From positions 125,054,001 through 125,118,000 of the forward strand of contig NC_092344.1 of NCBI RefSeq assembly GCF_963676685.1: a DNA stretch of 64,000 nucleotides, read 5' to 3'. This stretch comes from Mytilus edulis. Its lineage: Eukaryota. The notes beneath the pieces were generated by a model, which searched no databases, was not told the origin of the DNA, and was given only the letters and a program-made list of their open reading frames with translations. The position numbers and the translations under genes were made by a program. Positions 17,631-39,000 of this stretch are shown piece by piece (position 1 is the stretch's first letter; the number at the start of each line of letters is the position of its first letter).

Positions 17631-20600
17631 ATGCCATCCTGATATCGTTTCTTGCGACATTGTAAACGACGTGATAAAACAAATCAATTTGTAATAGATC
17701 GTGATAAGTCCTAGGCTTATGAATTCCCGTTTCTATCTAGGTTCAAATACTAATTTTATTTTCATTCAGTAAAGAACAAAGATCCAATATTCCCCGCCAT
17801 GCACATTACATGTCATATTTTATCTATCAAAAACCAAGGAACAAGGGAATAACTAAAAAAAAACTTTTGTTTTGTTTCGTTTTCTTTTTTATTTTCAATA
17901 TCTAAAAAGAAATAAAAGCTTCACAGCAAATGAAATGGGATTTCCATTACAATTTATATTTCAAAGGGTCATTATACTGCTTAAAAATATTTGATTACGA
18001 ATTATTTTCGAAATTGTCAAAGACATTGCTTATGATATGAGTTTCACTTAATCTGACAAGAATTGTACACATGAGAGTGCTAACAAGACCGGACGATCGG
18101 ACGCCCAGTATTTTTATGTCTCATGCATGCGTTTAGCTCAGTAATAAAAAACCCAAGGTTATAGACTCCAATTCCTGGAAAGAGAAGTCACTTCAGTTCC
18201 TATACTCCGAAGTTCCTAAATTATACAGAAGTGCCGCTGTAATGGGGTCCGTTTAAACGGTTTTTGATATGTCAAATAGAAGATTGGGTGGGAAACTTTA
18301 CATCAAATATTTATGAATTGAATGATGGTAGTTTCAAGGAAACAATAAAATTGGGTTAAAAATATAAATATATGAATTGGTGGGTATTTTGAATTTAAAC
18401 AAAAATCTAACTAGTGTCGGATTCTGGGGGAGTACATGTGCTTAAATAAAAAATATTTTTCTGCACAAAAAGGTCCAAAACATTTTTCGGCTCGCTCCGC
18501 TCGGCAAAACATCCACATCATTTCAACCCTGGCTACGCCACTGTCAACTAAATTCTGAAAAAACTATTGTAACCCATTACTCATTTTTTACTCTCAACAT
18601 ATATCAGATAACTAACAATATTATAGAGCTACTGTTGTCGATATAAGGTTCCTATTTAGAATATAGTAATGTCATAAAGAAATAATGTCTTATTGATGAA
18701 TAATATATGAAGATAGCCTGGTCTTTAGGTACTTATATACAGGGATCTTCACTTAGAATTAGCTGTTCCAGTAATCAGTGAAGAAATATGTTAACAAAAT
18801 ATGCAATATTGTTGTTGAATAAAAAAAAAGAATAATTATATAATGTGGTATAGGGTAGCACTTACAATAATATTGTGTGTGGCATCTTGAATTTTTACTA
18901 CCAGTCTCTGAACTCCTGTTTTTGTTTTGATGACACACAAAGAATACTGTATACCAAGTAGGTACTAACAGTACAAACAAGATTTAAATGATTACATTTC
19001 TGTCTGTCAAGACTTTGAAAATGATGCCTCTATAAAATTTGGTTGAGGCAAAAAAGTTAGAAAATGGAAACAAAACATTTAGCAATTTTTCCGTTTGTAA
19101 AGGGCATAGCTCTCGTACTGTTCAAATGACTCCACCAAAATTCTAAATTGATCTGTGTTTTGTGGTAATGAGCATTGTGCATATAACTTGATGTACATAC
19201 TGACATGGGTAAAACTTAATGTCAACTCTGTTACGGTGGGGGGCATAAAAATAAATGGAGATATATATGTTAAAAGAGATGCCACCAACTTAATCTATGT
19301 TTTGTGGTTATAAACAGTGTAAGTTTCATAATATTTGGTTGGGGCAAACCTAAATTGAGAAAACAGAAACAATTTTTTCCCCTATTTTTATGTGTGTAAG
19401 GGTCATATGAACTGTTATAGTGACACCACCCAATTTCAAACTTGACCTGTGTTTTGTGGTAAATTATTAAGCATTGTGTAAAAGTTTTATAACACTTGGT
19501 TGAAGGAAACTAAAGTTAGAGAACAGAACCCGTTTCGGGATGAATGCAACAGACAAGGGTAACACTTCATATTCCCTTAGCCTAGCAGCAGGGGATAAAA
19601 ACATGAAAAAGTTGTCTTTGCATGCCTGGAATACTGGGCAAGAAGACATGTTATTACACATAACTCCACTCATACTTTGTTGCATATGTTTATTGGTTTT
19701 GTATTATAGAACAATTACACTCAAGTAATGATGACATTATTTTTACAAAGTTTTATCCTATATTTATTGTTTATCTCTCATTTGTTCAATAGTTACATTT
19801 GTATAGTAATATCAGTTTTGCTACATAAGATAAACTCCAGCTCCAATTTTACATAAATGACATGAAATATGGCCCCATTGTGATGAATTCTAACGTGATG
19901 AGGTCAGACTGTTGGTGAACACAGTGTGGTTGTTGTAAGAAAATAAACAATATTTTCTACAAGAAAGTTAAATTGTAGTTACCTAAATCAAAACTAACAT
20001 CTTTCTCAGAGCAGTTATACCCTATAGCTTTGGCAAAATGACTCAGTTTACAAAACTTTTGCCTGCAGTTGCATATCCAGGGGTAGTTTGGGGGGTTTGA
20101 CATTCAATGCATTTGAATAGGGCGATATGGTAGGAACACCCCAACCCCCCTTGTATCCTGGGTTGGGAACCCTCATTTTTCGGTTCAGCCTCTGACCTGG
20201 GCCACTAAATTTTCTGGCTAACAGACGGCAAATTCAGCTGCCAAATTAAACCAAGCAGCATTTGTATAAGCTTTGTAAAACACAGATTCATAAGACAGAA
20301 ATTACATAAATGATTTGTTATCTGATTATTATCTACATAGAATACATAAAGAGCACCATTTAAATAAGTAATTCAAGACCTAAAAAACAGTACCATTCAT
20401 TAGCTGCTAAAACAGGGCTGATTAATCTCTTATCAGAAATTAAAACCATTTTATACAATAATTAAATACATTAACATAGATAAATATACTTAAAACAAGA
20501 CAAGCTTTTTACATGAATATAAAACAAGACTGAAATCCTATGTTTTACTATTTTTACACCTCCTATTTTGATCTAAATACTCTAAAGCAAGTCTTGCTAT

Positions 20601-20892
20601 GTTGGGTGTGTAGCATGGTTTTAGTTAAATTCTAACATAATAACTTGACTCAAAACCTGTAAGAAATTTGAAGTATATTTTAGTTTGTAATATACAGCGC
20701 TTTATGTCTAAGAAGGAATACAATGAGTTATAAGTACAAACGAACAGATTTACAGATAAGAAGTTTTGTAAAAGAAAAGAATGAAGTAGAACAAAGATGT
20801 AAAACTACTGTACATTTATATATACATCGTGCTGAGTAATGACAAAGAACACATTCTGTGGTATATACATCATGTTACAAAACAACATTTCT

Positions 20893-21099
20893 CTACGTTG
20901 CTATCTCTTCAACTCTGGCTCGTTTTGCAGACTGCTTCTTCTTTGTTGTCGTTGAATCATTTTCTTTATTGGCTGACGATGACGTTGATTTGTGATGCTG
21001 AACGTACCTGGTTACCGTGGAAACACCATCTACAAACCGGGTCTTGTATAAAACGTTGGCGTTATTAAACATACCATCCTTCAATGAGACGACGATGAA
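20893..21099 (-). CDS. SMC2: SMC2 terminal exon copy B (distal), ending ...[21 protein letters not shown]
   Basis: Acceptor TTTTATTTTCAG, phase 0, open to TAG at 20895-20893 (ORF 20893..21117). Confidence 0.85.
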
Positions 21100-24000
21100 C
21101 TGAAAATAAAATATCAAAGGTAGGTAAAGTCATTACGTTATATCTCGTGACGTAGATGGCGCTGTGGTCGATGTGAATCGTTCCACCGTAGATACACCAT
21201 CAATAAACCGTGTCTTGTATAAGACGTTGGCATTTTGAAACATCCCGTCTTTCAAAGACACCACAATAAACTGAAAATAAAATTACAATTTGTTTACAAA
21301 TCTTTCAAATAGAAAATTTCTAGCATGCTCTAAACTTACTTCTAAGCTACTTCTTGTCCTTGCCAGAAATATTTCTTACCAGTTCTTTTAAATATATTAT
21401 TTTAAACTTAATATGAGGGAAGCAAACAACATCATGCAATAAACATTTCATTGTATAGCAAAAGTTTGAAGACTAAGTTAAATCTCAAAAGTTAAAACCA
21501 TATCAGCATTGACTCCAATTCTGAAATATGTCTGACAATTCAAGTCAAACATAAAACAAAATTGGTTTTGCTTTTATCCAATTTTCCACCCTGTAGAAAC
21601 CTTGCTATACAATAAATGAAAAAAAAATAATTATATGAGGTACCAGTTTTCATGTTGTAAACAAAAGTATAATTCTTACAATCAGTTTTAATCTACTATC
21701 AAGAAGACGATTATTCTTTTTGTCAAGGGGTACTTTACGGATCATCCAGAGCCAAAAAATCCCAATCTTCAATATCATAAGGGTCAAACTCTTAACAGTA
21801 AATGTCAAAACCATCAAAATTTGACCTTTATTTTTATCATTCATGACATCGGTTCACATCTTAAAAGATTTAGTCATGTGATTCTCTAATTATCTTGAAA
21901 CAATCCAACCTAGACATTTAATCTCCCTTTGACTGAAGACATAATGCATTCTAATGATTGAAGTAGTAGAATTTTTATTGGATCATAGATCTTATGTATG
22001 AAACAAATTTGACATAAAATCATGAAAACTGATACGTATCGAAATGTGTAAATTCTTATCATACAGTGCAGTGCTATTATAAGGTGGTTGACAAAGGGTA
22101 AAAAGGCTTTATTTGATACAAAAGTTGGCTGAACACATAATGTATCAGGGCTCACACTACTTCAGAATTATAGGGAGAAGTGACTTCTCTTTTTGAAACT
22201 GATAGAGAGAAGTGGTGAGATTTGAAAGAGAAGTGCTCATTCGCGCGGTGCGCTACAATGTTTGGATTTTACAATAGTATAAAGGGCCATATGTAAATAA
22301 TGTTCTTTTTAAATTGTTCAATTCATATCTGAGTAAAAAAAATACAATTAAAGTAACATTTGAAATTAAAAGTTGTTTAAGTTTTACTAAGGTTCTTGTG
22401 AGAAACTTATTCCAACTAAATATCTAGCACTAAAAAAAAAATTATTTTAAAAAATGTAAAGAAATTATAATATATCATTATTACAATTTAATTAAAAATT
22501 ATCTTGTGTATGAAATTCAGTGTTTCTCATAAAAAAATATAAAAGTTATTAAGCTGGGCCATAATATATTGAAATTAGTATAATAGTCTCAGAGTTAAGC
22601 AACTTTGATAGTTTGAAACAATCCATAAAAAAATATAGGGAATTATATACACCAATCAATTAGATGTAACCAAAAGTCTCTTAATGTGTGTGGAATGCGT
22701 AATTGATCCTTTGGGATCAATATTCTTCTGTCAGCTGTTCCGTCCGTGCGTCCGTAGTAATTATTGTAAAAGTACGGATTTCGGTCATAGCTGGTCCGGT
22801 TCAGATCCGTAGTTTAGAAATCGGTCAATGGCGGACGAATGCAAGAAAATTTACAAAAATAAACGATGTTTGACAAGTTATTTGAAAAGGAACATGACGT
22901 TTTTAATGCAATAAATGGATTAAACATTTACTGGAGGCAACTTTATCACGTTTAAATGAAGTAACAAACTTATTTTGCCGCCGAAATTTAGGTTGATGTA
23001 CGTTTTCGAGTAACAAACACCGGAACTGGCGAAAATGCATGAAGTGATAAAAAGTTGTATTTTTATCAAATAACCTGCTACACACTGCGAAGACAATGCT
23101 TCTACCTCTTTTCTAAAGATAATGAATCTTTTATGTCTGAATTTCTTTAATTATCAATAAAAAAATGATGTTTCATCAACTTGGTAAAAATTGAAAATGT
23201 CCGATGACGGAAGCGACTGAAAGCGAGTATCGTCAAGAACAGGGCGACTTGATTTCGCTTTTGGGGGTCGGGGAAAGCGAAGTGACGGTCGGGAAGGCGA
23301 CTTCTTCACCCAAGTCGCCTGGTAGCGTGAGCCCTGATGTATGAAACAGGTGTTACCATAGCATGTAACAACTATAAATCATCTGTAATATTTTGTTTTA
23401 ATAAGGATAAATAATCATTAAATGTACATATTTTGGGAAAACTTCTTCAGACATGCCAAAACAATTAATATGTTGAAAGTATGGTATTTATTATTTTTTT
23501 CAAACAGTATGACTTCGGTTTTTTAACAACCCTCTAGTCCCTGTTGTCAATTCTTTCCACACCATAAATTAGCACTGTTTTATTAGTAGGACACTTCCAA
23601 ACATCTGCATTGCTAATAAAATTGAAAAAACAACAACAAAAGTAGTCCAATAATTACCTGTGAATGTTTAAAGTGAGATTTAATCATCTGTCCAATGTTC
23701 TGTGTGTGTGATATGTCTAAAGCAGCATCAACCTCATCCAGGATATATAATGGTGCTGGCTTGAATAACAACATGGCTAAAATCAGGGACAAGGCTATCA
23801 GTGATCTAGAAAGAGAATTAACAGGATATATAATGGTGCTGGCTTAAATAACAACACGGCTAAAATCAGGGACAAGGCTATCAGTGATCTAGAAAGAGAA
23901 TTAACAGGATATATAATGGTGCTGGCTTGAATAACAACATGGCTAAAATCAGGGACAAGGCTATCAGTGATCTAGAAAGAGAATTAACAGGATATATAAT

Positions 24001-27000
24001 GGTGCTGGCTTGAATAACAACATGGCTAAAATCAGGGACAAGGCTATCAGTGATCTAGAAAGAGAATTAACAGGATATATAATGGTGCTGGCTTGAATAA
24101 CAACATGGCTAAAATCAGGGACAAGGCTATCAGTGATCTAGATAGAGAATTAACAGGATATATAATGGTGCTGCCTTAAATAACAACATGGCTAAAATCA
24201 GGGACAAGGCTATCAGTGATCTAGAAAGAGAATTAACAGGATATATAATGGTGATGGCTTGAATAACAACATGGCTAAAATCAGGGACAAGGCTATCAGT
24301 GATCTAGAAAAAGAATTAACAGGATATATAATGGTGCTGGCTTGAATAACAACATGGCTAAAATCAGGGACAAGGCTATCAGTGATCTAGAAAGAGAATT
24401 AACAGGATATATAATGGTGCTGGCTTGAATAACAACATGGCTAAAATCAGGGACAAGGCTATCAGTGATCTAGATAGAGAATTAACAGGATATATAATGG
24501 TGCTGGCTTGAATAACAACATGGCTAAAATCAGGGACAAGGCTATCAGTGATCTAGAAAGAGAATTAACAGGATATATAATGGTGCTGGCTTGAATAACA
24601 ACATGGCTAAAATCAGGGACAAGGCTATCAGTGATCTAGAAAGAGAATTAACAGGATATATAATGGTGCTGGCTTGAATAACAACATGGCTAAAATCAGG
24701 GACAAGGCTATCAGTGATCTAGATAGAGAATTAACAGGATATATAATGGTGCTGGCTTGAATAACAACATGGCTAAAATCAGGGACAAGGCTATCAGTGA
24801 TCTAGAAAGAGAATTAACAGGATATATAATGGTGCTGGCTTGAATAACAACATGGCTAAAACCAGGGACAAGGCTATCAGTGATCTAGAAAGAGAATTAA
24901 CAGGATATATAATGGTGCTGGCTTGAATAACAACATGGCTAAAATCAGGGACAAGGCTATCAGTGATCTAGAAAGAGAATTAACAGGATATATAATGGTG
25001 CTGGCTTGAATAACAACATGGCTAAAATCAGGGACAAGGCTATCAGTGATCTAGAAAGAGAATTAACAGGATATATAATGGTGCTGGCTTGAATAACAAC
25101 ATGGCTAAAATCAGGGACAAGGCTATCAGTGATCTAGAAAGAGAATTAACAGGATATATAATGGTGCTGGCTTGAATAACAACATAGCTAAAATCAGGGA
25201 CAAGGCTATCAGTGATCTAGAAAGAGAATTAACAGGATATATAATGGTGCTGGCTTGAATAACAACATGGCTAAAATCAGGGACAAGGCTATCAGTGATC
25301 TAGAAAGAGAATTAACAGGATATATAATGGTGCTGGCTTGAATAACAACATGGCTAAAATCAGGGACAAGGCAATCAGTGATCTAGAAAGAAAATAGACA
25401 AGATATATAATGGTGCTGGCTTGAATAACAACATGGCTAAAATCAGGGACAAGGCTACCAGTGATCTAGAAAGAGAATTAACAGGATATATAATGGTGCT
25501 GGCTTGAATAACAACATGGCTAAAATCAGGGACAAGGCTATCAGTGATCTAGAAAGAGAATTAACAGGATATATAATGGTGCTGGCTTGAATAACAACAT
25601 GGCTAAAATCAGGGACAAGGCTATCAGTGATCTAAAAAGAGAATTAACAGGATATATAATGGTGCTGGCTTGAATAACAATATGGCTAAAATCAGGGACA
25701 AGGCTATCAGTGACCTAGAAAGAGAATGGACAAGATATATAATGGTGCTGGCTTGAATAACAACATGGCTAAAATCAGGGACAAGGCTATCAGTGATCTA
25801 GAAAGAGAATTAACAGGATATATAATGGTGCTGGCTTAAATAACAACATGGCTAAAATCAGGGACAAGGCTATCAGTGACCTATAAAGAGAATGGACAAG
25901 ATATATAACGGTGCTGGCTTAAATAACAACATGGCTAAAATCAGGGACAAGGCTATCAGTGATCTAGAAAGAGAATTAACAGGATATATAATGGTGCTGG
26001 CTTAAATAACAACATGGCTAAAATCAGGGACAAGGCTATCAGTGATCTAAAAAGAGAATTAACAGGATATATAATGGTGCTGGCTTGAATAACAATATGG
26101 CTAAAATCAGGGACAAGGCTATCAGTGACCTAGAAAGAGAATGGACAAGATATATAATGGTGTTGGCTTGAATAACAACATGGCTAAAATCAGGAACAAG
26201 GCTATCAGTGATCTAGAAAGAGAATTAACAGGATATATAATGGTGCTGGCTTAAATAACAACATGGCTAAAATCAGGGACAAGGCTATCAGTGACCTAGA
26301 AAGAGAATGGACAAGATATATAACGGTGCTGGCTTAAATAACAACATGGCTAAAATCAGGGACAAAGCTATCAGTGATCTAGAAAGAGAATTAACAGGAT
26401 ATATAATGGTGCTGGCTTAAATAACATGGCTAAAATCAGGGACAAGGCTATCAGTGACCTAGAAAGAGAATGGACAGGATATATAATGGTGCTGGCTTAA
26501 ATAACAACATGGCTAAATCAGGGACAAGGCTATCAGTGATCTAGAAAGAGAATTAACAGGATATATAACGGTGCTGGCTTGAATAACAACATGGCCAAAA
26601 TCAGGGACAAGGCTATCAGTGATCTAGAAAGAGAATTAACAGGATATATAACGGTGCTGGCTTGAATAACAACATGGCTAAAATCAGGGACAAGGCTATC
26701 AGTGATCTAGAAAGAGAATGGACAAGATATATAATGGTGCTGGCTTGAATAAAAACATGGCTAAAATCAGGGACAAGGCTATCAGTGACCTAGAAAGAAA
26801 ATTGACGAGATATATAATGGTGCTGGCTTGAATAACAACATGGCTAAAATCAGGGACAGGGCTATCAGTGACCTAGAAAGAAAATGGACAAGATATATAA
26901 TAGTGCTGGCTTGAATAACAACATGGCTAAAATCAGGGACAAGGCTATCAGTGACATAGAAAGAGAAAGGACGAGATATATAATGGTGCTGGCTTGAATA

Positions 27001-30000
27001 ATAACATGGCTAAATCAGGGCCAAGGCTATCAGTGACCTAGAAAGAGATGCTTATAACGCTTTAACAAATGATATGCAGTAGTTTATTGAAGGCAAGGCT
27101 AAAATAAAAAGATTGTATGTTTGCCCAAACGCGACCGACCTAAAATAAACTCGCTGACTCAAATTCTTTTTTTGCCATTTTTTTGGAAGATTTTTTTCAT
27201 GTCCGCTACGCCATCGTATAAAACTTAATGTTTGTCGTCTTTGCATTTGAAAGAAACTGTGAATAAGATTAAAAGAAAGCGTATAAGAGACGCAGTTAAT
27301 CGATATTCAATGTTCTCTGATTTAACGAACGTAAAGAAGTAAAACATGTGAAGTGGCACAGTTTTTTATGCTGTAGTTGTCTGTACTACCAAACCCTTAT
27401 CTATATGCTCAATGTCAATTTCATCGTGTAATCGAATATCTGGTAAGAATATTCAGGTAGATTTGTTCAAAACCATGTGCAATTGAATATCTTCAATGTT
27501 TTCTGACAGGAAATGGATCCGGAAGTTGCCAATTTACAATCTTGCAAGAAGATTTTGTTTTTAATGAATAAAAAGGAATTATTTCTTGATAAATTGTTGT
27601 CTTTAATTATAATTTTCCTTTATCATGTAAATTACAATGTATATGCCCTTTTATTCAAATAGTTCAAATTTACAAGTCTCAGTTGACAAAATCAGTATGT
27701 TGCTGTTTGGGAGAATTTAATAAAACTATAATTGCTCACAGAATCAGAAATATAATCTGCAATATAAATATAAATCCCTTTAGGCAAGAGAAATCTGACT
27801 TTTGTCAGAAATATTTTTTTTCAAATGTGCAAAAGTAAACACATGTTATGGACACCATATTGGATTTTAATACAAATTTGTGAGGAAGCCTCTAGAACCA
27901 TGACCTAAACATAAATTTGACCTCAAACCCATGATATGGATTAACCTTCAAGGGGAGATAACTTACCTCTCAATTCACTGAGAGATTATTCCATGCATCA
28001 TTGAATCAAACTGTGACCCTCGACCCATGATAAAGATTGACCTTCAAGGGGAGATAACTGACTACTCAATTCACTGAGAGATTCTTCCATGCATCACTGA
28101 ATCAAACTTTGACCTCCAACCCATGATAAAGATTGACCTTCAAGGGGAGATAACTTACCACTCGATTCACTGAAAGATTCTTCCATGCATCACTGAATCA
28201 AACTTTGACCTCCAACCCATGATAAAGATTGACCTTCAAGGGGAGATAACTTACCACTCGATTCACTGAAAGATTCTTCCATGCATCATTAAATCAAACT
28301 TTGACCTCCAACCCATGATTAAGATTGACCTTCAAGGGGAGATAACTTACCATTCAATTCACTGAGAGATTCTTCCATGCATCATTGAATCGAACTTTGA
28401 CCTCCAACCCATATGATAAAGATTGACCTTCAAGGGGAGATAACTGACCACTCAATTCACTGAGAAATTCCTTCCATGCATCATTGAATCAAACTTTGCT
28501 CTCCAACCCATGATATAGATTGACCTTTAAGGGGAAATAACTTATCATTCAATTCACTGAGAGATTCCTTCCATGCATCATTGAATCAAACTTTGACCTC
28601 CAACCCATCTGATAAGGATTGACCTCAGGAGGATTTAACTTACCTCTGTCCACCACTCAATTCACTGAGAGATTCTTTCCACACATCGCCGAATCCAACT
28701 TTGACCTCCAACCCATCTAATACTGATTGACCTTCAGGGGGAGATAACTTGGCTCTGGCACCAGGCAGCAACGTTGAGAAGATTGAACTAAAGTCCTATT
28801 AAATATTAACACATACATATATTATTTTCTGATATCTGGCTGTATTTACTTGTTCCAAAGCCTTCTCAACACCGTATTATTTTTCAGTAGCTTAAAACTT
28901 ATAAATTAGTTCCAACGCTTTCTTGTTGTTGCATAATTTTCTGTAATACGAAAATATTAACTTGTTTCAAAGCCTCGTTTTTTTTCTGATATTTGAAGTT
29001 ATAACTTTTTTCAAAAACTTGTTTTTTTAATGACATCAGACCATATTAACTTGTTTCTAAACCTTTTTCAAAGCCTCATTATTTTTCTGAAATCTAACTT
29101 ACCTTATTTACTTGTTCCCAAGCCTTTTTCAAAGCCTCATTCTTTTTCTGATCAAGTTCTGCAATAACAGCAGCTATTTTAGCTTTATCATTCAGTACAA
29201 TCTTTCTTTTCTTCATTAAATCTGCATACTGGAAAAGAACATTCAATCCAGGTAATAAATTAAAATTCTACAGAAATCCTAACGAGGGATAAGAGCAGAT
29301 TAATATTTTGATTTAAAATTTTATAAGTTATATTGTAAATGAAGTCACTTCTATCATTAAAATCAGTTATGAATAGAGAAAGTTGTCCAACACTTTTAAA
29401 ATATGCACTTCATAGAAACAGCAGCCAACTTGGTCATTGAATCATGTATGTTGGTAGTCTGTTTCACAAATAAAACGAAATAGAATTGAATCCTATTAGA
29501 TTTATAGAATAACATATCGAAGAATTCAAATAGAGACTAGATATGTCAAAGCGACATGAATGGCCCCGTCTCAAAAATATTTAAAATGTGCAATTTCAAT
29601 AACACATGTGGACACAAACATGATGGTAGTCTCTGAAAAATCAGCTCAAAATCTGGAGGCGTTTTGAAAAATGTCCATATAAATGTGATTTTCAACAATT
29701 TTCAAAGTTGTAAACCCTTAATTTTGGCAAAAGTTAGCAGAGCGGAACGAAACTTCAACATGATCTGTAACTTATCATGAGTAACTACCATACTAAAAAT
29801 CAGCCCAATATCTGAAAGCATTTGGAAAAAAGTGCCTTTAAGTTTTAACTGTGATTTTCAACGATTTATCTAAGTCCAAAGCCCGTAATTTCGTCAAAAA
29901 TTAGCCAAGGGGAACAAAACTTTAACTTGCTCTGTAACTCATCTTGGTTAACTAATATGCCAAAAATCATCCCAATATCAGAAAGTGTTTAGAAAAAAAG

Positions 30001-33000
30001 TCTGTATAACTGTGATTTTCAATAATTTATCAAAGTCCAAAGCCCATAATTTCAGCAAAATTTAGTGGAGCGGAACAAAACTTAAACTTGATCTGTAACT
30101 CATCATGGTTAACTCACATATCAAAAATCAGCCCAATACCTGAAGGCGTTTAGAAAAAAACTCTGTACAATGTTTTGTTGCGGAACGACGGAATTTCAGA
30201 ATTTCTGACAAGGGTAAAACTATATGGCACCGACAACTTCGTTGCGGGGCCATAAAAAGTATTCAACTTGTGACAGAACAACAAATTAATTCACGAATGC
30301 CCATAGTGCATTAGTTAATTAGCTTTGATGCTCAGTCACAACTTAATATTTTTCTCTATTTGAATTCTTTGATGAGTTATTCTTTTTATTACATTGGCAA
30401 ATGACTTTTTTTATGAAATTAATGTAGAAAATGTAAGGACCTATATCTTTTTTCTAAGCATCCACAATTTGTTTTGATTACGTCTTGGTAGCGCCTATTG
30501 TTGTATGAGGTCAGAGAGTTAAATACCACTGATTATTTATCGGTTTTTATTTAACTTGGAATTCAATGCAACTCACTGCAACCAATGTAATAATATTGTT
30601 CAAGTTTGCCAGAAATTCATGTTTATTTCCTTCTTTCTTTTGCCTTTCCATTACTCTTACATGGTCTCTAAAAAATTCATAACACTTCTGTTTTTTTTTT
30701 TACCAAGATCCTCCATCTCTTACCAATCCATTTCCCTGTCCCCTCCCCCACATCTATATATAATTCATTTCATCAAATATTCTTTACCTGTTCCTCAGCC
30801 TTCCCTAACATGTTCATAGCTCTCATGTTAACACTTTTAGACAATTTATCCTTAGTATCTGTAAGTTTCTGGATTCTTCTCTCCGCCTCCTTGGGATCAT
30901 TTGCTTTAAAATCATAAGCTGTGTTTTGTTGTCCAAAGTATTTCTTCTCATCAGCTATCCAATCATAGTTTTGTAATAAACTATCCACCTGTCGAAAAAC
31001 AAAGTTATTTTGTAATAAACTATCCACCTGTCATAAAACAAAGTTATTTTGTAATAAACTATTCACCTGTCAGAAAACAAAGTTATTTTGTAATAAACTA
31101 TCCACCTGTCAGAAAACAAAGTTCTTTTGCAATAAACTATTCACCTGTCAAAAAACAAAGTTATTTTGTAATAAACTATCCACCTGTCAGAAAACAAAGT
31201 TATTTTGTAATAAACTATTCACCTGTCAAAAAACAAAGTTATTTTGTAATAAACTATCCACCTGTCATAAAACAAAGTTATTTTGTAATAAACTATCCAC
31301 CTGACAGAAAACAAAGTTATTTTGTAATAAACTATCCACCTGTCAGAAAACAAAGTTCTTTTGCAATAAACTATTCACCAACTATTCACCTGTCAGAAAA
31401 CAAAGTTATTTTGTAATAAACTATCCACCTGTCAGAAAACAAAGTTCTTTTGCAATAAACTATTCACCTGTCAAAAAACAAAGTTATTTTGTAATAAACT
31501 ATCCACCTGTCAGAAAACAAAGTTATTTTGTAATAAACTATTCACCTGTCAAAAAACAAAGTTATTTTGTAATAAACTATCCACCTGTCATAAAACAAAG
31601 TTATTTTGTAATAAACTATCCACCTGACAGAAAACAAAGTTATTTTGTAATAAACTATTCACCTGTCAGAAAACAAAGTTATTTTGTAATAAACTATCCA
31701 CCTGTCAGAAAACAAAGTTATTTTGCAATAAACTATTCACCTGTCAAAAAACAAAGTTATTTTGTAATAAACTATCCACCTGTCAGAAAACAAAGTTATT
31801 TTGTAATAAACTATTCACCTGTCAAAAAACAAAGTTATTTTGTAATAAACTATCCACCTGTCAGAAAACAAAGTTATTTTGTAATAAACTATTCACCTGT
31901 CAAAAAACAAAGTTATTTTGTAATAAACTATTCACCTGTCAAAAAACAAAGTTATTTTGTAATAAACTATCCACCTGACAGAAAACAAAGTTATTTTGTA
32001 ATAAACTATTCACCTGTCAAAAAACAAAGTTATTTTGTAATAAACTATCCACCTGTCAGAAAACAAAGTTATTTTGTAATAAACTATTCACCTGTCAAAA
32101 AACAAAGTTATTTTGTAATAAACTATCATTCGGGTTATAGAACATATTTTTTTTTAATAAACTATCCACCTGTCAAATAACTTGATTATTTTACACTTAG
32201 AAACATGTAACTGGCAATTTGTTTCTATATATTTACTTCACATGTATAATTTGAAGTATTAAATTTAATTTGTCAAAAAAACCCACAGCTCATGATATGC
32301 TCGTCGCCCTTTCAATGAATTAAGTTCAAGACCTTCTGAATGTCATATCAGAAATTTATAAAAAACACTAAATAACTGTATAGTAACCTGTTTTGCAGCT
32401 GTTTTAGAATCTGTTTGGTATTTAGCTATTTTATGTTATAGTAACCTGTTTTGCAGTTGTTTTAGAATCTGTTTGGTATTTAGCTATTTTATGTTATAGT
32501 TACCTGTTTAGCAGCTGTTTTAGAATCTGTTTGGTATTTAGCTATTTTATGTTATAGTGACCTGTTTTGCAGCTGTTTTAGAATCTGTTTGGTATTTAGC
32601 TATTTTATGTTAGTTACCTGTTTTGCAGCTGTTTTAGAATCTGTTTGGTATTTAGCTATTTTATGTTATAGTTACCTGTTTAGCAGCAGTTTTAGAATCT
32701 GTTTGGTATTTAGCTATTTTATGTTATAATCACCTATTTGCAGCATTTTTAGAATCTGTTTATTATTTATCTATTTTATGTTATAATCACCTGTTTTGCA
32801 GCGTTTTTAGAATCTGTTTGGTATTTAGCTATTTTATGTTCCATTTCCTGTATTTTCAGTTCAGAAGCATGGAGATCCTTCGTGAGATGTTTTTGTTCGT
32901 CCACCTTTTTGTTGATGTCTTTATTACAAGCCTTTAGAAGTTCCTTCTGTTTGGTTACTTCAGATTGGGCCTCTTTCACATCATCCTAGAATCAACAATT

Positions 33001-36000: not shown

Positions 36001-39000
36001 TCTAGGTAGACAAAGATAGACGTATTGTACCTTTTTTCATATAAATCAAACGCTACTCCGTCAATCACGCTCCTAGAGTGTAAAGATATTAATTGTTCAA
36101 TGATGTCCGACTTGGAGCGATTTTGCTTTTTGAATCAAGATCGTCATTTTCAACTATTATTTGTACACACGAGTTCTCAGACTAAACTGGCCACCTGCTG
36201 ATTGATACATTGCCACAAGATAAGAGAGAAACAACAGCAGGGTTCCAGTTTATTCTCGGACTTTATCGTTAATAAATAGCAAACAGAAGTCTGCGTTAGC
36301 ATCTGAATTATATATATTTACTAACGAGCCTTCAAAAAGCATTCAGAATTCGGTGTTGACAGGGTTCGTTTTCTTCCAGGTTAGATTAAAGTTAATTGAT
36401 AGGGAAATTTTGTAGGACTTTGAAAATTGTTCGGTTAAACTGAAATTCAGTTTTATCAGGGTTCGGTTTACCCAGGTTTCACTGTATTCTGTTAATGTTT
36501 CGTTATGTGCTATATTTTGACATACCTCCTGTTAATGTTTCATTATGTGCTATATACTGACCTACCTCCTATTCATATTTCATTATGTGCTATATATTGA
36601 CCTTCATCCTGAGTATGTTTCGTTATGTGCTATATATTGACCTACCTCCTGTTAATGTTCCAGCAGGATCAAAGGAATCTCCTTCCAATGTGACAGATTT
36701 CTTCATGATTCTCTCATCGAATGTCACTTTCTTGGCAGTGTTCATGTCATTACAGATGAATGCAGAACCAAACACAAACTCCATTGCTGCCTGCAGATCT
36801 TTCTCAAAACCAATCAATGACAAAGCTGTGTTAACATTCCCTTTACCAACCTAAAAACAGAAACATGTTCCACTATCAAGGACAATACTGTGTTGACATT
36901 ACCTTTACCAATCTCAAAATACCGCTACATTGACAACAACATTTAAGTAAACTGCATCTTTTATTGTCGACATGTTTCGCCGATTAGATCGGCTTCATCA
37001 GGACAAAGTATACAAAATTAGAACCCCTGAAGTACAAAAAAATGGCATCATGTATGTGACGTCAAGATTGTCCATTGTTGACATTGCTATGGGATACTCT
37101 ATATCATTATGTAATGTTGGACAGAAAATGAATCAAACATAGTACAATGCAAATGAAGTTACTAAATTTAGAGTTAATCTTTAATTGTACGAATTGTCTT
37201 TAACTTTAAAATGGTTGTAAACTATTCAATTTTAGGGCACACCCCTACCACTTCGACTGGGTTCCCTTTGGCCGGAGGTTCTTTATCAATCTCAAAATAG
37301 AAACATGTTCCACAATTAAGGACAATACTGTGTTGACATTCCCTTTACTAAACTTAATTAAAACAAAAGTTTGTCATTATAATCATTAAAATGGATAATT
37401 TAGAGACCCTTATATCCTTAATTCACCTTTTTGCTGCAAATTAACCCCCACTTCCTGTAAATTAACTTACAAGATTCTCTGCCTTCCTGACGACACCCCT
37501 GATCTATACACCTGGCAGATATTTTATTGAGAGGTATAATTGTGTATCGTTTCCTCAATTCACCTCGTGCTACAAATTACCTCCCCACCTCCCTCTATCA
37601 GTAAATTAACTTACAAGATCCTCTGCCTTCCTGACGACCCCCTGATCTATACATCTGGCAGATATTTTATTGAGAGGTATGATTGTGTATCGTTTCCTCA
37701 ATTCACCTCGTGCTACAAATTACCTCCCCACCTCCCTCTATCAGTAAATTAACTTACAAGATCCTCTGCCTTCCAGACGACCCCCTGATCTATACACCTG
37801 GCAGATATTTTATTGAGAGGTATGATTGTGTATCGTCTCCTCAGTTCACCTTGTGCTACAAATTACCTCCCCACCTCCCTCTATCAGTTAATTAACTTAC
37901 AAGATCCTCTGCCTTCCTGATGACCCCCCTGATCTATACACCTGGCAGATATTTTATTGAGAGGTATGATTGTGTATCTTCTCCTCAATTCACATTTGTG
38001 CTACAAATTACTGCCCCTCCCAGCCCTTCTCCTATCAGTAAATTAACTTACAAGATCCTCTGCCTTCCTGACGACCCCCTGATCTATACATCTGGCAGAT
38101 ATTTTATTGAGAGGTATGATTGTGTATCGTCTCCTCAGTTCACATTTGTGCTACAAATTACCTCCCCACCTCCCTCGATCAGTAAATTAACTTACAAGAT
38201 CCTCTGCCTTCCTGACGACCCCCTGATCTATACATCTGGCAGATATTTTATTGAGAGGTATGATTGTGTATCGTCTTCTCAGTTCACCTTTCTGAAGCAG
38301 TTTTTTCCCAGTAACTTCAGTATCAACAACAACATTGTATAACTGAAACATAAGAAATAAACATTTATATCAAATCCTATAGAAAAAGGTTTAAATTAAT
38401 GGTTTAATAAATAAACTAGATGCTGCAAGAAATTGGTTTTACTTGAAGGATGGAGTGACATTTGTGTCATTAATAAAAAAGCATGGTACACATATCAATT
38501 AAATTCCTTCTTTACAAATGTATTTCTGTTTTTGAAGACATCATCAAAATGTTTTTCATTCTAAGTCAGGTAAAGTGCACTGAAAAAGAAGACCTGTGTA
38601 AATAACACAATGTTTTGTCACGTATATTATCCAGTAATCAAATATCCCCAAAAAAGTTCAATTTTCAAATGCATCAGATATAACAGTGAAATTTAATTTT
38701 GAACTTAAAATAATTTCAGTTCAATAAATCAGCAATATCAGAATTAACTTTTAAAAGGAGTATGTCCAGTAAGACTTTATTTTGGCCCACTTTATTTTGG
38801 CCCCAAAATATAGCAGTTTTACAAAATTGTTAAAAAGTAAACTTTTAGTTATTTATTGGACAGTAGAATGCTTCTGCTACATAAATATGGGTTCTTTTTG
38901 ACAATACATTGCACATATATTGGGTACTAGCACCATTAAGTCATGGTAAATTACTGAAATCTTCAAAATTCTAGCATTTTAGTTAAATTTTAGATGGTTT

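What the first reader, a model, noticed from the sequence alone, without database searches (positions are those of the whole stretch)
20893..21285. SMC2 has two tandem, selectively maintained last exons, with and without an NLS-like tail
Seen: two copies of the terminal exon lie 171 bp apart. Both have the identical acceptor TTTTATTTTCAG, are in phase with the E23 donor and are open. Over the first 29 codons I count 14 synonymous codon differences and only 2 amino-acid changes (Q/N, I/V), the pattern expected from an old duplication with purifying selection on both copies. After the conserved head strand the tails diverge. Copy A ends in a short Ser/Thr-rich tail ([16 protein letters not shown]), while copy B has a longer tail with a basic cluster [10 protein letters not shown]. 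Established: SMC2 is shared by condensin I (cytoplasmic in interphase) and condensin II (nuclear). Inference: alternative 3'-splice choice could yield SMC2 isoforms with different localisation or phosphorylation, possibly dedicated to condensin I versus II or to oocyte versus soma. I know of no description of this.
Basis: partly seen in the sequence, partly recalled or inferred. Interest (0 to 1): 0.88.

Follow-up and report, generated by a model that had tools for sequence, protein, structure and literature searches.

The report
Duplicated last exon of mussel SMC2
In the mussel (Mytilus) condensin gene SMC2, the start of the last coding exon was duplicated long ago. Both copies have stayed intact, so choosing between two splice acceptors 171 bp apart gives either the normal long basic tail or a short tail without it; this is a tidy but not unprecedented case of splicing variety born from exon duplication.

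Summary
The window is Mytilus, edulis complex, and SMC2 lies on the minus strand. Its terminal coding exon exists as two in-frame tandem copies, A (21270..21133) and B (21099..20893), and both follow TTTTATTTTCAG. Over the shared 29 codons there are 14 synonymous codon differences and 2 amino-acid changes. Synonymous sites are saturated (pS 0.76) while pN is 0.045 (Fisher p = 4e-10), so both copies have been under purifying selection for a long time.

B is the canonical end of RefSeq M. edulis SMC2 (XP_071166504.1). A is already annotated as isoform X2 of M. californianus (XP_052104030.1, 1184 aa), and its last 45 residues are identical to copy A in the window. A-type exons with Gln12, Ile23 and a short Ser/Thr/Pro tail also occur in two other, unidentified species.

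No plausible splice donor follows A. The A form is therefore an upstream alternative 3' splice site of the same terminal exon, and B then becomes 3' UTR. A lacks both the KRAR basic cluster and a KEN motif; both motifs recur in SMC2 tails.

Usage levels, tissue pattern and any effect on localisation remain untested. This is a new member of a known kind, tandem-exon-duplication splicing.

The parts
23658..23805 (-). SMC2 exon 23, which carries the Walker B and D-loop region (...[38 protein letters not shown]). Its donor is CAG|GT after 23658, phase 0.
   Evidence: Sequence read. tblastn of XP_071166504.1 (P0186) aligns residues 1090-1142 at 23807..23649.
21271..21288 (-). Acceptor of copy A. 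The last 12 nt, TTTTATTTTCAG, are identical to the acceptor of B, and homology to the B acceptor region extends about 18 nt. Its pyrimidine tract is weaker (12 of 20) and there is no yUnAy branch-point motif 10-45 nt upstream.
21133..21270 (-). Copy A of the terminal coding exon: 45 codons plus TAA. It encodes the last beta-strands of the SMC2 head with Gln12, Ile23 and Glu30, followed by a short Ser/Thr-rich tail. It has no KEN motif and no basic cluster.
   Evidence: It is identical to the last 45 residues of XP_052104030.1, M. californianus isoform X2. A-type relatives are P0001, P0171 and P0063.
21100..21132 (-). The 33-nt spacer, starting with a second stop codon (TGA). It holds the pyrimidine tract and branch-point-like motifs for the B acceptor (TTTAC at -25, TTGAT at -14). 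It contains no GT. The only GT near the A stop is at 21136, and it would define a 37-nt intron and shift the frame.
20893..21099 (-). Copy B of the terminal coding exon: 68 codons plus TAG. This is the canonical SMC2 C-terminus, and its tail carries KEN and [10 protein letters not shown]. It becomes 3' UTR when the A acceptor is used.
   Evidence: It is 100% identical to the end of XP_071166504.1 from M. edulis. KEN and K[KR]x[KR] are conserved in all named bivalve B tails.
19689..20892 (-). Presumed shared 3' UTR. The first AATAAA signals outside the coding sequence are at 19768..19763 and 19694..19689. Another AATAAA lies inside the coding part of B at 20970..20965.
   Evidence: Pattern scan. 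Inference only; no transcript ends were seen.
23739..27048 (-). Context rather than part of the A/B pair. This is an 83-bp minisatellite of 39.9 copies. Each unit holds the exon-23 acceptor plus the first 67 nt of the exon. It shows that junction-spanning tandem duplication is an active process in this gene.
   Evidence: Read-through of a unit gives ...[12 protein letters not shown], which is the end of the 1119-aa and 1121-aa Mytilus models; a 1036-aa M. coruscus model ends the same way.

Best explanation
An ancient tandem duplication copied about 171 bp spanning the 3' end of intron 23 and the first 135 nt or so of the terminal coding exon of SMC2. The terminal exon therefore has two equally phased acceptors.

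If splicing from the exon-23 donor (23658) goes to the downstream acceptor (21099), the product is the canonical protein. Its disordered tail carries a KEN motif and the basic cluster [10 protein letters not shown].

If splicing goes to the upstream acceptor (21270), copy A is translated. It encodes the same last head beta-strands with three conservative substitutions. Translation stops 45 codons in, roughly where the duplicated unit ends. Copy B and the normal 3' UTR then follow as untranslated sequence, with no exon junction downstream of the stop, so by the exon-junction rule the message would probably not be an NMD target.

Shown here:
- the anatomy;
- the saturation of synonymous sites together with strong amino-acid conservation;
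- the identity of A between two Mytilus species;
- the existence of RefSeq models for both forms;
- the presence of A-type exons in two further species.

Inferred:
- B is the major form. It has the better branch point and pyrimidine tract, and it is the only full-length form among the listed RefSeq and GenBank models of M. edulis, M. trossulus, M. galloprovincialis and a fourth Mytilus annotation whose name is cut off.
- A is a minor or condition-specific form.
- The isoforms differ functionally mainly by loss of the tail motifs, which could affect nuclear import and/or APC/C-type turnover. I give this last step about one in three.
For: - Anatomy and phase.
- Repeat: period 171, 82% nucleotide identity over 104 nt including 18 nt of intron.
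- Selection: pS 0.756 against pN 0.045, Fisher p = 3.9e-10, and the neutral-on-one-copy simulation gives p = 7e-4.
- Copy number: only two copies in the genome.
- B is the end of XP_071166504.1 from M. edulis. A is the end of XP_052104030.1, M. californianus isoform X2, at 45/45 residues, while the rest of the protein differs at 24/1139 and B at 2/68 between the two species.
- A-type exons P0001/P0171 and P0063 share Gln12, Ile23, the FYFQ acceptor translation and the tail pattern R-[FY]-[TV]-S..P-S-[ST]-S-[RK].
- No usable donor lies after A.
- The folded head ends about 30 residues into the exon. Yeast Smc2 chains end there (6yvu, 6yvd), and human SMC2 (9f5w) aligns to exon positions 1-41.
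- Gln12 is the normal state in fungal SMC2, and Ile23 and Glu30 occur in SMC2 of other taxa, so A should encode a working head.
- Tail motifs: K[KR]x[KR]; KEN in 69/266 distinct tails against 4.7 +/- 2.2 in shuffles.
Against: - No read-level RNA evidence could be obtained.
- Transcript support for A rests on a single Gnomon model in one species. Among the members listed for M. edulis, M. trossulus, M. galloprovincialis and the fourth Mytilus annotation, no A form appears (15 of 20 cluster members were listed).
- In the nearest non-Mytilus relative (P0023/P0172/P0173), the open frame upstream of B runs through what should be the A tail without the stops. A may be altered or lost there. This is unresolved without DNA.
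- Heterodont-like contigs L004 and L005, and contig L003, show no A copy within 400-570 nt upstream of B.
- The species that hold P0001 and P0063 are unknown.
Confidence: 0.78

Rival explanations
1. Defensive maintenance. The upstream acceptor is unavoidably used at some rate because it is a good acceptor placed ahead of the real one. Selection then keeps copy A able to encode a working head C-terminus, so that those messages do not yield a truncated, possibly dominant-negative SMC2. The short tail has no role of its own and the two forms are interchangeable.
For: - Purifying selection is strongest on the 29-residue head part.
- The A tail is short and ends where the duplicated unit ends.
- One A-type allele reads through its stop for 7 more residues (P0171), which suggests a loosely constrained end.
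- Fungal SMC2 works with a short tail.
- The same gene tolerates 40 decoy acceptors upstream of exon 23.
Against: - Over the long time implied by saturated synonymous sites, a point mutation could simply have destroyed the A acceptor. Instead its 12-mer is kept, and FYFQ is kept in all three A-type species.
- The A tail itself shows a shared pattern across species.
- The A tail is 16/16 identical between M. californianus and the window.
Confidence: 0.3
2. Copy A is a dead pseudo-exon. The RefSeq X2 model reflects splicing noise or an annotation artefact.
For: - Only one of the Mytilus annotations lists an A form.
- The branch-point and pyrimidine context of A is weaker.
- In another animal's SMC2 (L043), upstream partial copies of this same exon look like decaying repeats.
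Against: - Of 18 nucleotide differences, 15 are synonymous, and the frame is open.
- The 45 residues are identical across two Mytilus species whose SMC2 otherwise differs at 2.1% of residues.
- A-type open exons occur in two more species.
- All A-specific residues are ones seen in functional SMC2 elsewhere.
Confidence: 0.06
3. Assembly artefact: a collapsed or expanded haplotype, or a mis-joined repeat.
For: The gene is full of near-identical minisatellites, which are hard to assemble.
Against: - A and B differ at 18 of 87 head positions, so they are not haplotypes or recent repeat units.
- The same arrangement is implied by independent RefSeq models in M. californianus.
Confidence: 0.01

Closest known systems
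Alternative splicing derived from tandem exon duplication, including mutually exclusive terminal exons (Drosophila pip and PGRP-LC, as reviewed in PMC9013439; human events in PMC9741552 and PMC8373072)
   Same: - Adjacent homologous exons arose by tandem duplication.
- They share the same phase, and only one contributes to the protein.
- The event is old and both copies are under purifying selection.
- The substituted region is a homologous structural segment.
   Different: - Here the two copies are not separate exons with their own ends. They are two acceptors inside one terminal exon, and the downstream copy is carried as 3' UTR in the A form.
- The duplicate is partial, so the isoforms differ mostly by presence or absence of a tail rather than by a like-for-like swap.
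- No competing RNA structure was detected (fold z = 0.04).
RefSeq models XP_052104022.1 (X1, 1207 aa) and XP_052104030.1 (X2, 1184 aa), SMC2-like, Mytilus californianus
   Same: X1 ends in copy B. X2 ends in copy A with exactly the window's 45 residues.
   Different: These are automatic gene models in a sister species, without any published description. The M. edulis model (XP_071166504.1) lists only B.
Fungal SMC2 C-termini (for example Chaetomium 6qj0/6qj1 and yeast 6yvu)
   Same: They have Gln at exon position 12 (DGMFQNAN) and a very short tail after the last head strand, as in copy A.
   Different: The resemblance is convergent. Copy A descends from the animal-type exon, and its flanks and acceptor are homologous to B.
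Splice-junction minisatellites of this genome (scan notes s1-832607 and s1-832324, plus the 83-bp array in this gene)
   Same: The same kind of mutation: tandem duplication of a unit holding an acceptor and the start of an exon.
   Different: Those arrays are young (93-98% identical units) and many-copied, and they give truncated reading frames. The A/B pair has two copies, is saturated at synonymous sites and is protein-constrained.

Membership tests
SMC2 (condensin core subunit) | The sequence matches the SMC2 head C-terminus and full-length SMC2 orthologues. | tested here: met
   The window's exons are nearly all 100% identical to XP_071166504.1, SMC2-like of M. edulis. The exon aligns to human SMC2 9f5w residues 1140-1180 and to yeast and Chaetomium Smc2 heads. 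Relatives carry PF02463 and PF06470.
Alternative exons derived from tandem exon duplication | Two adjacent homologous exon copies in the same phase, each with a splice acceptor. | tested here: met
   period 171, identical 12-nt acceptor, phase 0 with the exon-23 donor.
Alternative exons derived from tandem exon duplication | Purifying selection on both copies. | tested here: met
   pN 0.045 against pS 0.756, Fisher p = 3.9e-10, and the neutral-copy simulation gives p = 7e-4. Copy A is 45/45 identical between M. californianus and the window.
Alternative exons derived from tandem exon duplication | Transcripts that use each copy, one at a time. | tested here: inconclusive
   RefSeq X1 (B) and X2 (A) models exist in M. 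californianus.
Alternative exons derived from tandem exon duplication | Conservation of the duplicated arrangement across species. | tested here: inconclusive
   A-type exons occur in M. californianus and in two unidentified species (P0001/P0171, P0063). No A copy is seen upstream of B in L003, L004 or L005.
Classical monopartite NLS | K-[KR]-x-[KR] in an exposed or disordered region. | tested here: met
   KRAR lies within [10 protein letters not shown] in the B tail. The motif class is present in all seven named bivalve B tails and in 154/266 distinct long SMC2 tails, and it is absent from all A tails. This is a pattern match only.
Classical monopartite NLS | The motif drives nuclear import. 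| not testable with these tools
   This needs reporter-fusion localisation. No paper describing an SMC2 C-terminal NLS was found.
KEN-box degron (APC/C-Cdh1) | A KEN tripeptide in a disordered region, conserved beyond chance. | tested here: met
   ANKEND lies in the B tail. KEN occurs in 69/266 distinct SMC2 tails against 4.7 +/- 2.2 (maximum 13) in shuffles. Relatedness among the sequences inflates this count.
KEN-box degron (APC/C-Cdh1) | APC/C-dependent degradation through the motif. | not testable with these tools
   The only context found is yeast: Smc2 and Smc4 levels cycle, and Smc4 loss depends on APC/C (PMC6349450).

The most novel reading that the evidence does not exclude
The A/B acceptor choice is a regulated switch, conserved in mytilid and some other bivalves. 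It would produce a pool of SMC2 lacking both the KEN motif and the basic import-like cluster, for example a stable, import-independent store for oocytes and rapid cleavage divisions. The KEN-plus-basic module of the canonical tail would then be a general, so far undescribed control element of SMC2 in many eukaryotes.
Probability: 0.15. Interest if true: 0.65.

Novelty: new member of a known kind. Interest (0 to 1): 0.4.

Why it matters
SMC2 is treated as a single invariant core shared by condensin I and II, and I found no paper describing SMC2 protein isoforms. A long-maintained pair of C-termini offers a natural experiment on what the disordered SMC2 tail does. It is easy to test with junction counts and tail fusions. 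It also shows that one product of the junction-spanning tandem duplications so common in Mytilus genes has been retained under purifying selection. The scope is modest. The phenomenon belongs to a well-known class, one isoform is already in RefSeq, and no functional difference has been shown.

Tried and rejected
- A metagenome scan with P0172 gave 80 SMC2 last-exon loci from many eukaryotes. None was from a close relative and none had an A/B pair. Only L043 had upstream partial copies.
- Two scans of prokaryote genome contigs for host contamination found nothing.
- A profile search with the A-type alignment found no further A-type exons beyond P0001/P0171 and P0063.
- Cluster look-ups gave no accessions for those ORFs, so their species stay unknown.
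- RNA folding of the A/B region showed no unusual structure (z = 0.04), so I dropped a competing-structure model.
- A mini-intron from the GT at 21136 to the B acceptor was rejected. It would be 37 nt long and would shift the frame of B.
- Spliced full-length models of the window's gene were never joined or sent to any search. Exons were searched by reference, and database proteins were used for full-length comparisons.

Full report
**What is there**

The window's minus strand carries a complete SMC2 gene. tblastn of RefSeq XP_071166504.1 (SMC2-like, Mytilus edulis, P0186) places its exons from 56523 down to 20896, nearly all at 100% identity. The window sits at 125.05 Mb of a contig in a 1.37-Gb genome, and that protein lies on a 126.3-Mb record. 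The window is therefore Mytilus, edulis complex.

Exon 23 (23805..23658) ends in CAG|GT, phase 0. Downstream lie two copies of the terminal coding exon:
- Copy A runs 21270..21136 (45 codons), followed by TAA and then TGA.
- Copy B runs 21099..20896 (68 codons), followed by TAG.

Both copies follow the identical 12-mer TTTTATTTTCAG. The start-to-start distance is 171 nt, which is 57 codons. Nucleotide homology covers 104 nt at 82%, including 18 nt of intron. No other copy exists in the genome.

**Is it more than chance, and are both copies maintained?**

- In the first 29 codons, 14 codons differ synonymously and 2 change the residue, Q12N and I23V.
- Nei-Gojobori counts are 15.0 synonymous differences on 19.8 sites (pS 0.76, saturated) and 3.0 non-synonymous on 67.2 sites (pN 0.045). 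Fisher p = 3.9e-10.
- If only half of the 18 differences had fallen at random on one copy, two or fewer residue changes without a stop would be seen in 0.07% of trials.
- Gene conversion would erase the synonymous differences, so it cannot explain the pattern.
- The three A-specific residues (Gln12, Ile23, Glu30) all occur in bona fide SMC2 of other taxa, and Gln12 is the fungal norm.
- The PDB alignment shows that the folded head ends about 30 residues into this exon. Yeast Smc2 chains end there, so everything beyond is tail.

**Evidence that both forms are made**

Reads could not be examined. The protein collection nevertheless gave a direct answer.

The 90% cluster of the M. edulis protein contains M. 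californianus isoform X1 (XP_052104022.1, 1207 aa), which ends in B. It also contains isoform X2 (XP_052104030.1, 1184 aa), which ends ...KSHFKHSQ|[45 protein letters not shown]. That is exon 23 joined to copy A, with 45 of 45 residues identical to the window. From general knowledge of NCBI's pipeline, alternative Gnomon isoforms normally rest on transcript alignments. I could not inspect the support.

Between the two species the rest of the protein differs at 24 of 1139 residues and B at 2 of 68, while A differs at 0 of 45.

The listed models of M. edulis, M. trossulus, M. galloprovincialis and a fourth Mytilus annotation (name cut off in the output) show B and truncated forms but no A form (15 of 20 members were listed). 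A is therefore probably minor or condition-specific.

**Age and spread**

A-type exons occur as open frames on genomic contigs of two other, unidentified species (P0001/P0171 and P0063). They share Gln12, Ile23, the same FYFQ acceptor translation and a short tail fitting R-[FY]-[TV]-S..P-S-[ST]-S-[RK]. A profile search found no more.

Annotated SMC2 of scallops, Solemya, Mya, Mercenaria and Dreissena ends in B-type tails. Heterodont-like metagenome contigs (L004, L005) and L003 have no A copy in the 400-570 nt upstream of B.

In the nearest non-Mytilus relative (P0023/P0172/P0173, B 84% identical), the frame upstream of B is open through what should be the A tail. I cannot interpret this without DNA.

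Saturated synonymous sites, together with presence in species whose B tails are strongly diverged, argue for an old event. I cannot date it.

**How it works**

Between the A stop and the B acceptor there is no GT. The GT at 21136 would make a 37-nt intron and shift the frame. The A form therefore arises by use of the upstream acceptor of one and the same terminal exon. Translation ends at TAA, and copy B plus the normal 3' UTR trail behind as untranslated sequence. The first AATAAA signals outside the coding sequence are at 19768 and 19694. No exon junction follows the stop, so by the exon-junction rule the message would probably escape NMD; this is inference.

The 33-nt spacer and the A tail double as the pyrimidine tract and branch-point region for B (TTTAC at -25, TTGAT at -14). 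The region ahead of A has a poorer tract and no yUnAy motif. This fits B as the default, and the choice is probably made at the branch-point step (inference). No special RNA structure is predicted (z = 0.04).

A is short because the duplicated unit contained only the first 135 nt or so of the exon. Its tail still resembles the start of bivalve B tails (R-F/Y ... S-T-S), and it stops where the unit ends.

**What differs between the proteins**

The B tail carries [14 protein letters not shown] fits the minimal classical NLS pattern, and the equivalent KKK..KR[APL]R is present in every named bivalve B tail. 154 of 266 distinct long SMC2 tails in my sample have the pattern, and no A tail does.

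B also carries KEN (ANKEND). KEN occurs in 69 of 266 distinct tails from very diverse eukaryotes, against 4.7 +/- 2.2 after shuffling. The count is inflated by relatedness among the sequences, but the motif sits at varying distances from the head in animals, fungi and algae.

I found no paper on an SMC2 tail NLS or KEN box. In yeast, Smc2 and Smc4 levels cycle, and Smc4 loss depends on APC/C (PMC6349450).

The A isoform lacking import-like and degron-like motifs is therefore a sequence-based hypothesis, not a result. Both kleisin genes are in the genome: CAP-H2 on contig 7 and CAP-H on contig 4. Condensin I and II are thus both possible, but nothing ties either to an isoform.

**Comparison with what is known**

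Tandem exon duplication as a source of alternative, often mutually exclusive, exons is well established. This includes duplicated terminal exons in Drosophila pip and PGRP-LC (PMC9013439; also PMC9741552 and PMC8373072).

This case belongs to that class, with two particularities. The duplicate is partial, and the two copies share one terminal exon as alternative acceptors.

Within this gene the same mutational process is visibly active:
- an 83-bp unit (exon-23 acceptor plus 67 nt of exon) is repeated 39.9 times;
- similar junction-bearing arrays flank at least four other exons.

Other readers of this scan noted the same kind of array elsewhere in this genome (s1-832607 and s1-832324).

**Verdict**

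The core reading, two selectively maintained alternative ends with only one carrying the basic cluster, is supported. The localisation and condensin I/II ideas are untested.

The A isoform already exists as a database model in a sister species, and I found no published description. It is a new member of a known kind and of moderate interest.

Noticed in passing
window 23739-27048 (minus-strand gene): An 83-bp minisatellite of 39.9 copies at 95% identity. Each unit holds the exon-23 acceptor plus the first 67 nt of exon 23. Reading through one unit gives ...[12 protein letters not shown], which is exactly the end of the 1119-aa and 1121-aa Mytilus models and of a 1036-aa M. coruscus model. These forms (RefSeq isoforms in M. 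californianus, M. trossulus and a fourth Mytilus annotation, GenBank models in M. galloprovincialis and M. coruscus) lack Walker B and everything after it. About 40 decoy acceptors therefore sit ahead of an essential exon.
   Followed up: partly
window 27916-28750, 30969-32175, 32379-32840, 36489-36659, 37457-38290: Further minisatellites in SMC2 introns whose units contain exon ends together with a splice donor or acceptor. Examples are 39 bp x 30.7 with an acceptor plus the exon start VDSLLQN, and 143 bp x 5.8 covering residues 559-598. Junction-spanning tandem duplication looks systematic in this gene and, according to other scan notes, in this genome.
   Followed up: partly
SMC2 C-terminal tails of many eukaryotes (proteins P0001-P0411); window 20953-20961 encodes KEN: The tripeptide KEN is strongly over-represented in the disordered tail after the SMC2 head: 69 of 266 distinct tails, against about 5 after shuffling. 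It occurs in animals, fungi and algae. I found no paper describing a KEN box in SMC2.
   Followed up: partly
L043:2180-3180 (metagenome contig Ga0209052_1022907): Another animal's SMC2 last exon is preceded by six partial tandem copies of its first 22 codons, each with its own TGTAG acceptor. The period is about 149. Five copies are 90-95% identical to the real exon and the outermost is 75% identical. Synonymous and non-synonymous changes are mixed, and all copies run into Tyr/Cys-rich junk. This is an independent, apparently decaying version of the same duplication.
   Followed up: partly
window 21007 (minus strand, inside copy B): A near-consensus donor, CAG|GTACGT, lies inside copy B right after the last head strand (codons 30-32). 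No annotated Mytilus protein uses it.
   Followed up: no
P0171 versus P0001 (unidentified species): Two alleles or close species of an A-type exon differ in that the stop after ...SKPKT is read as Trp, which extends the tail by 7 residues. The very end of the A tail therefore seems loosely constrained.
   Followed up: no
window 20965-20970 (minus strand): An AATAAA hexamer lies inside the coding part of copy B (codons A-N-K). It could serve as an early poly(A) signal for A-form messages only. No transcript ends were available to check this.
   Followed up: no
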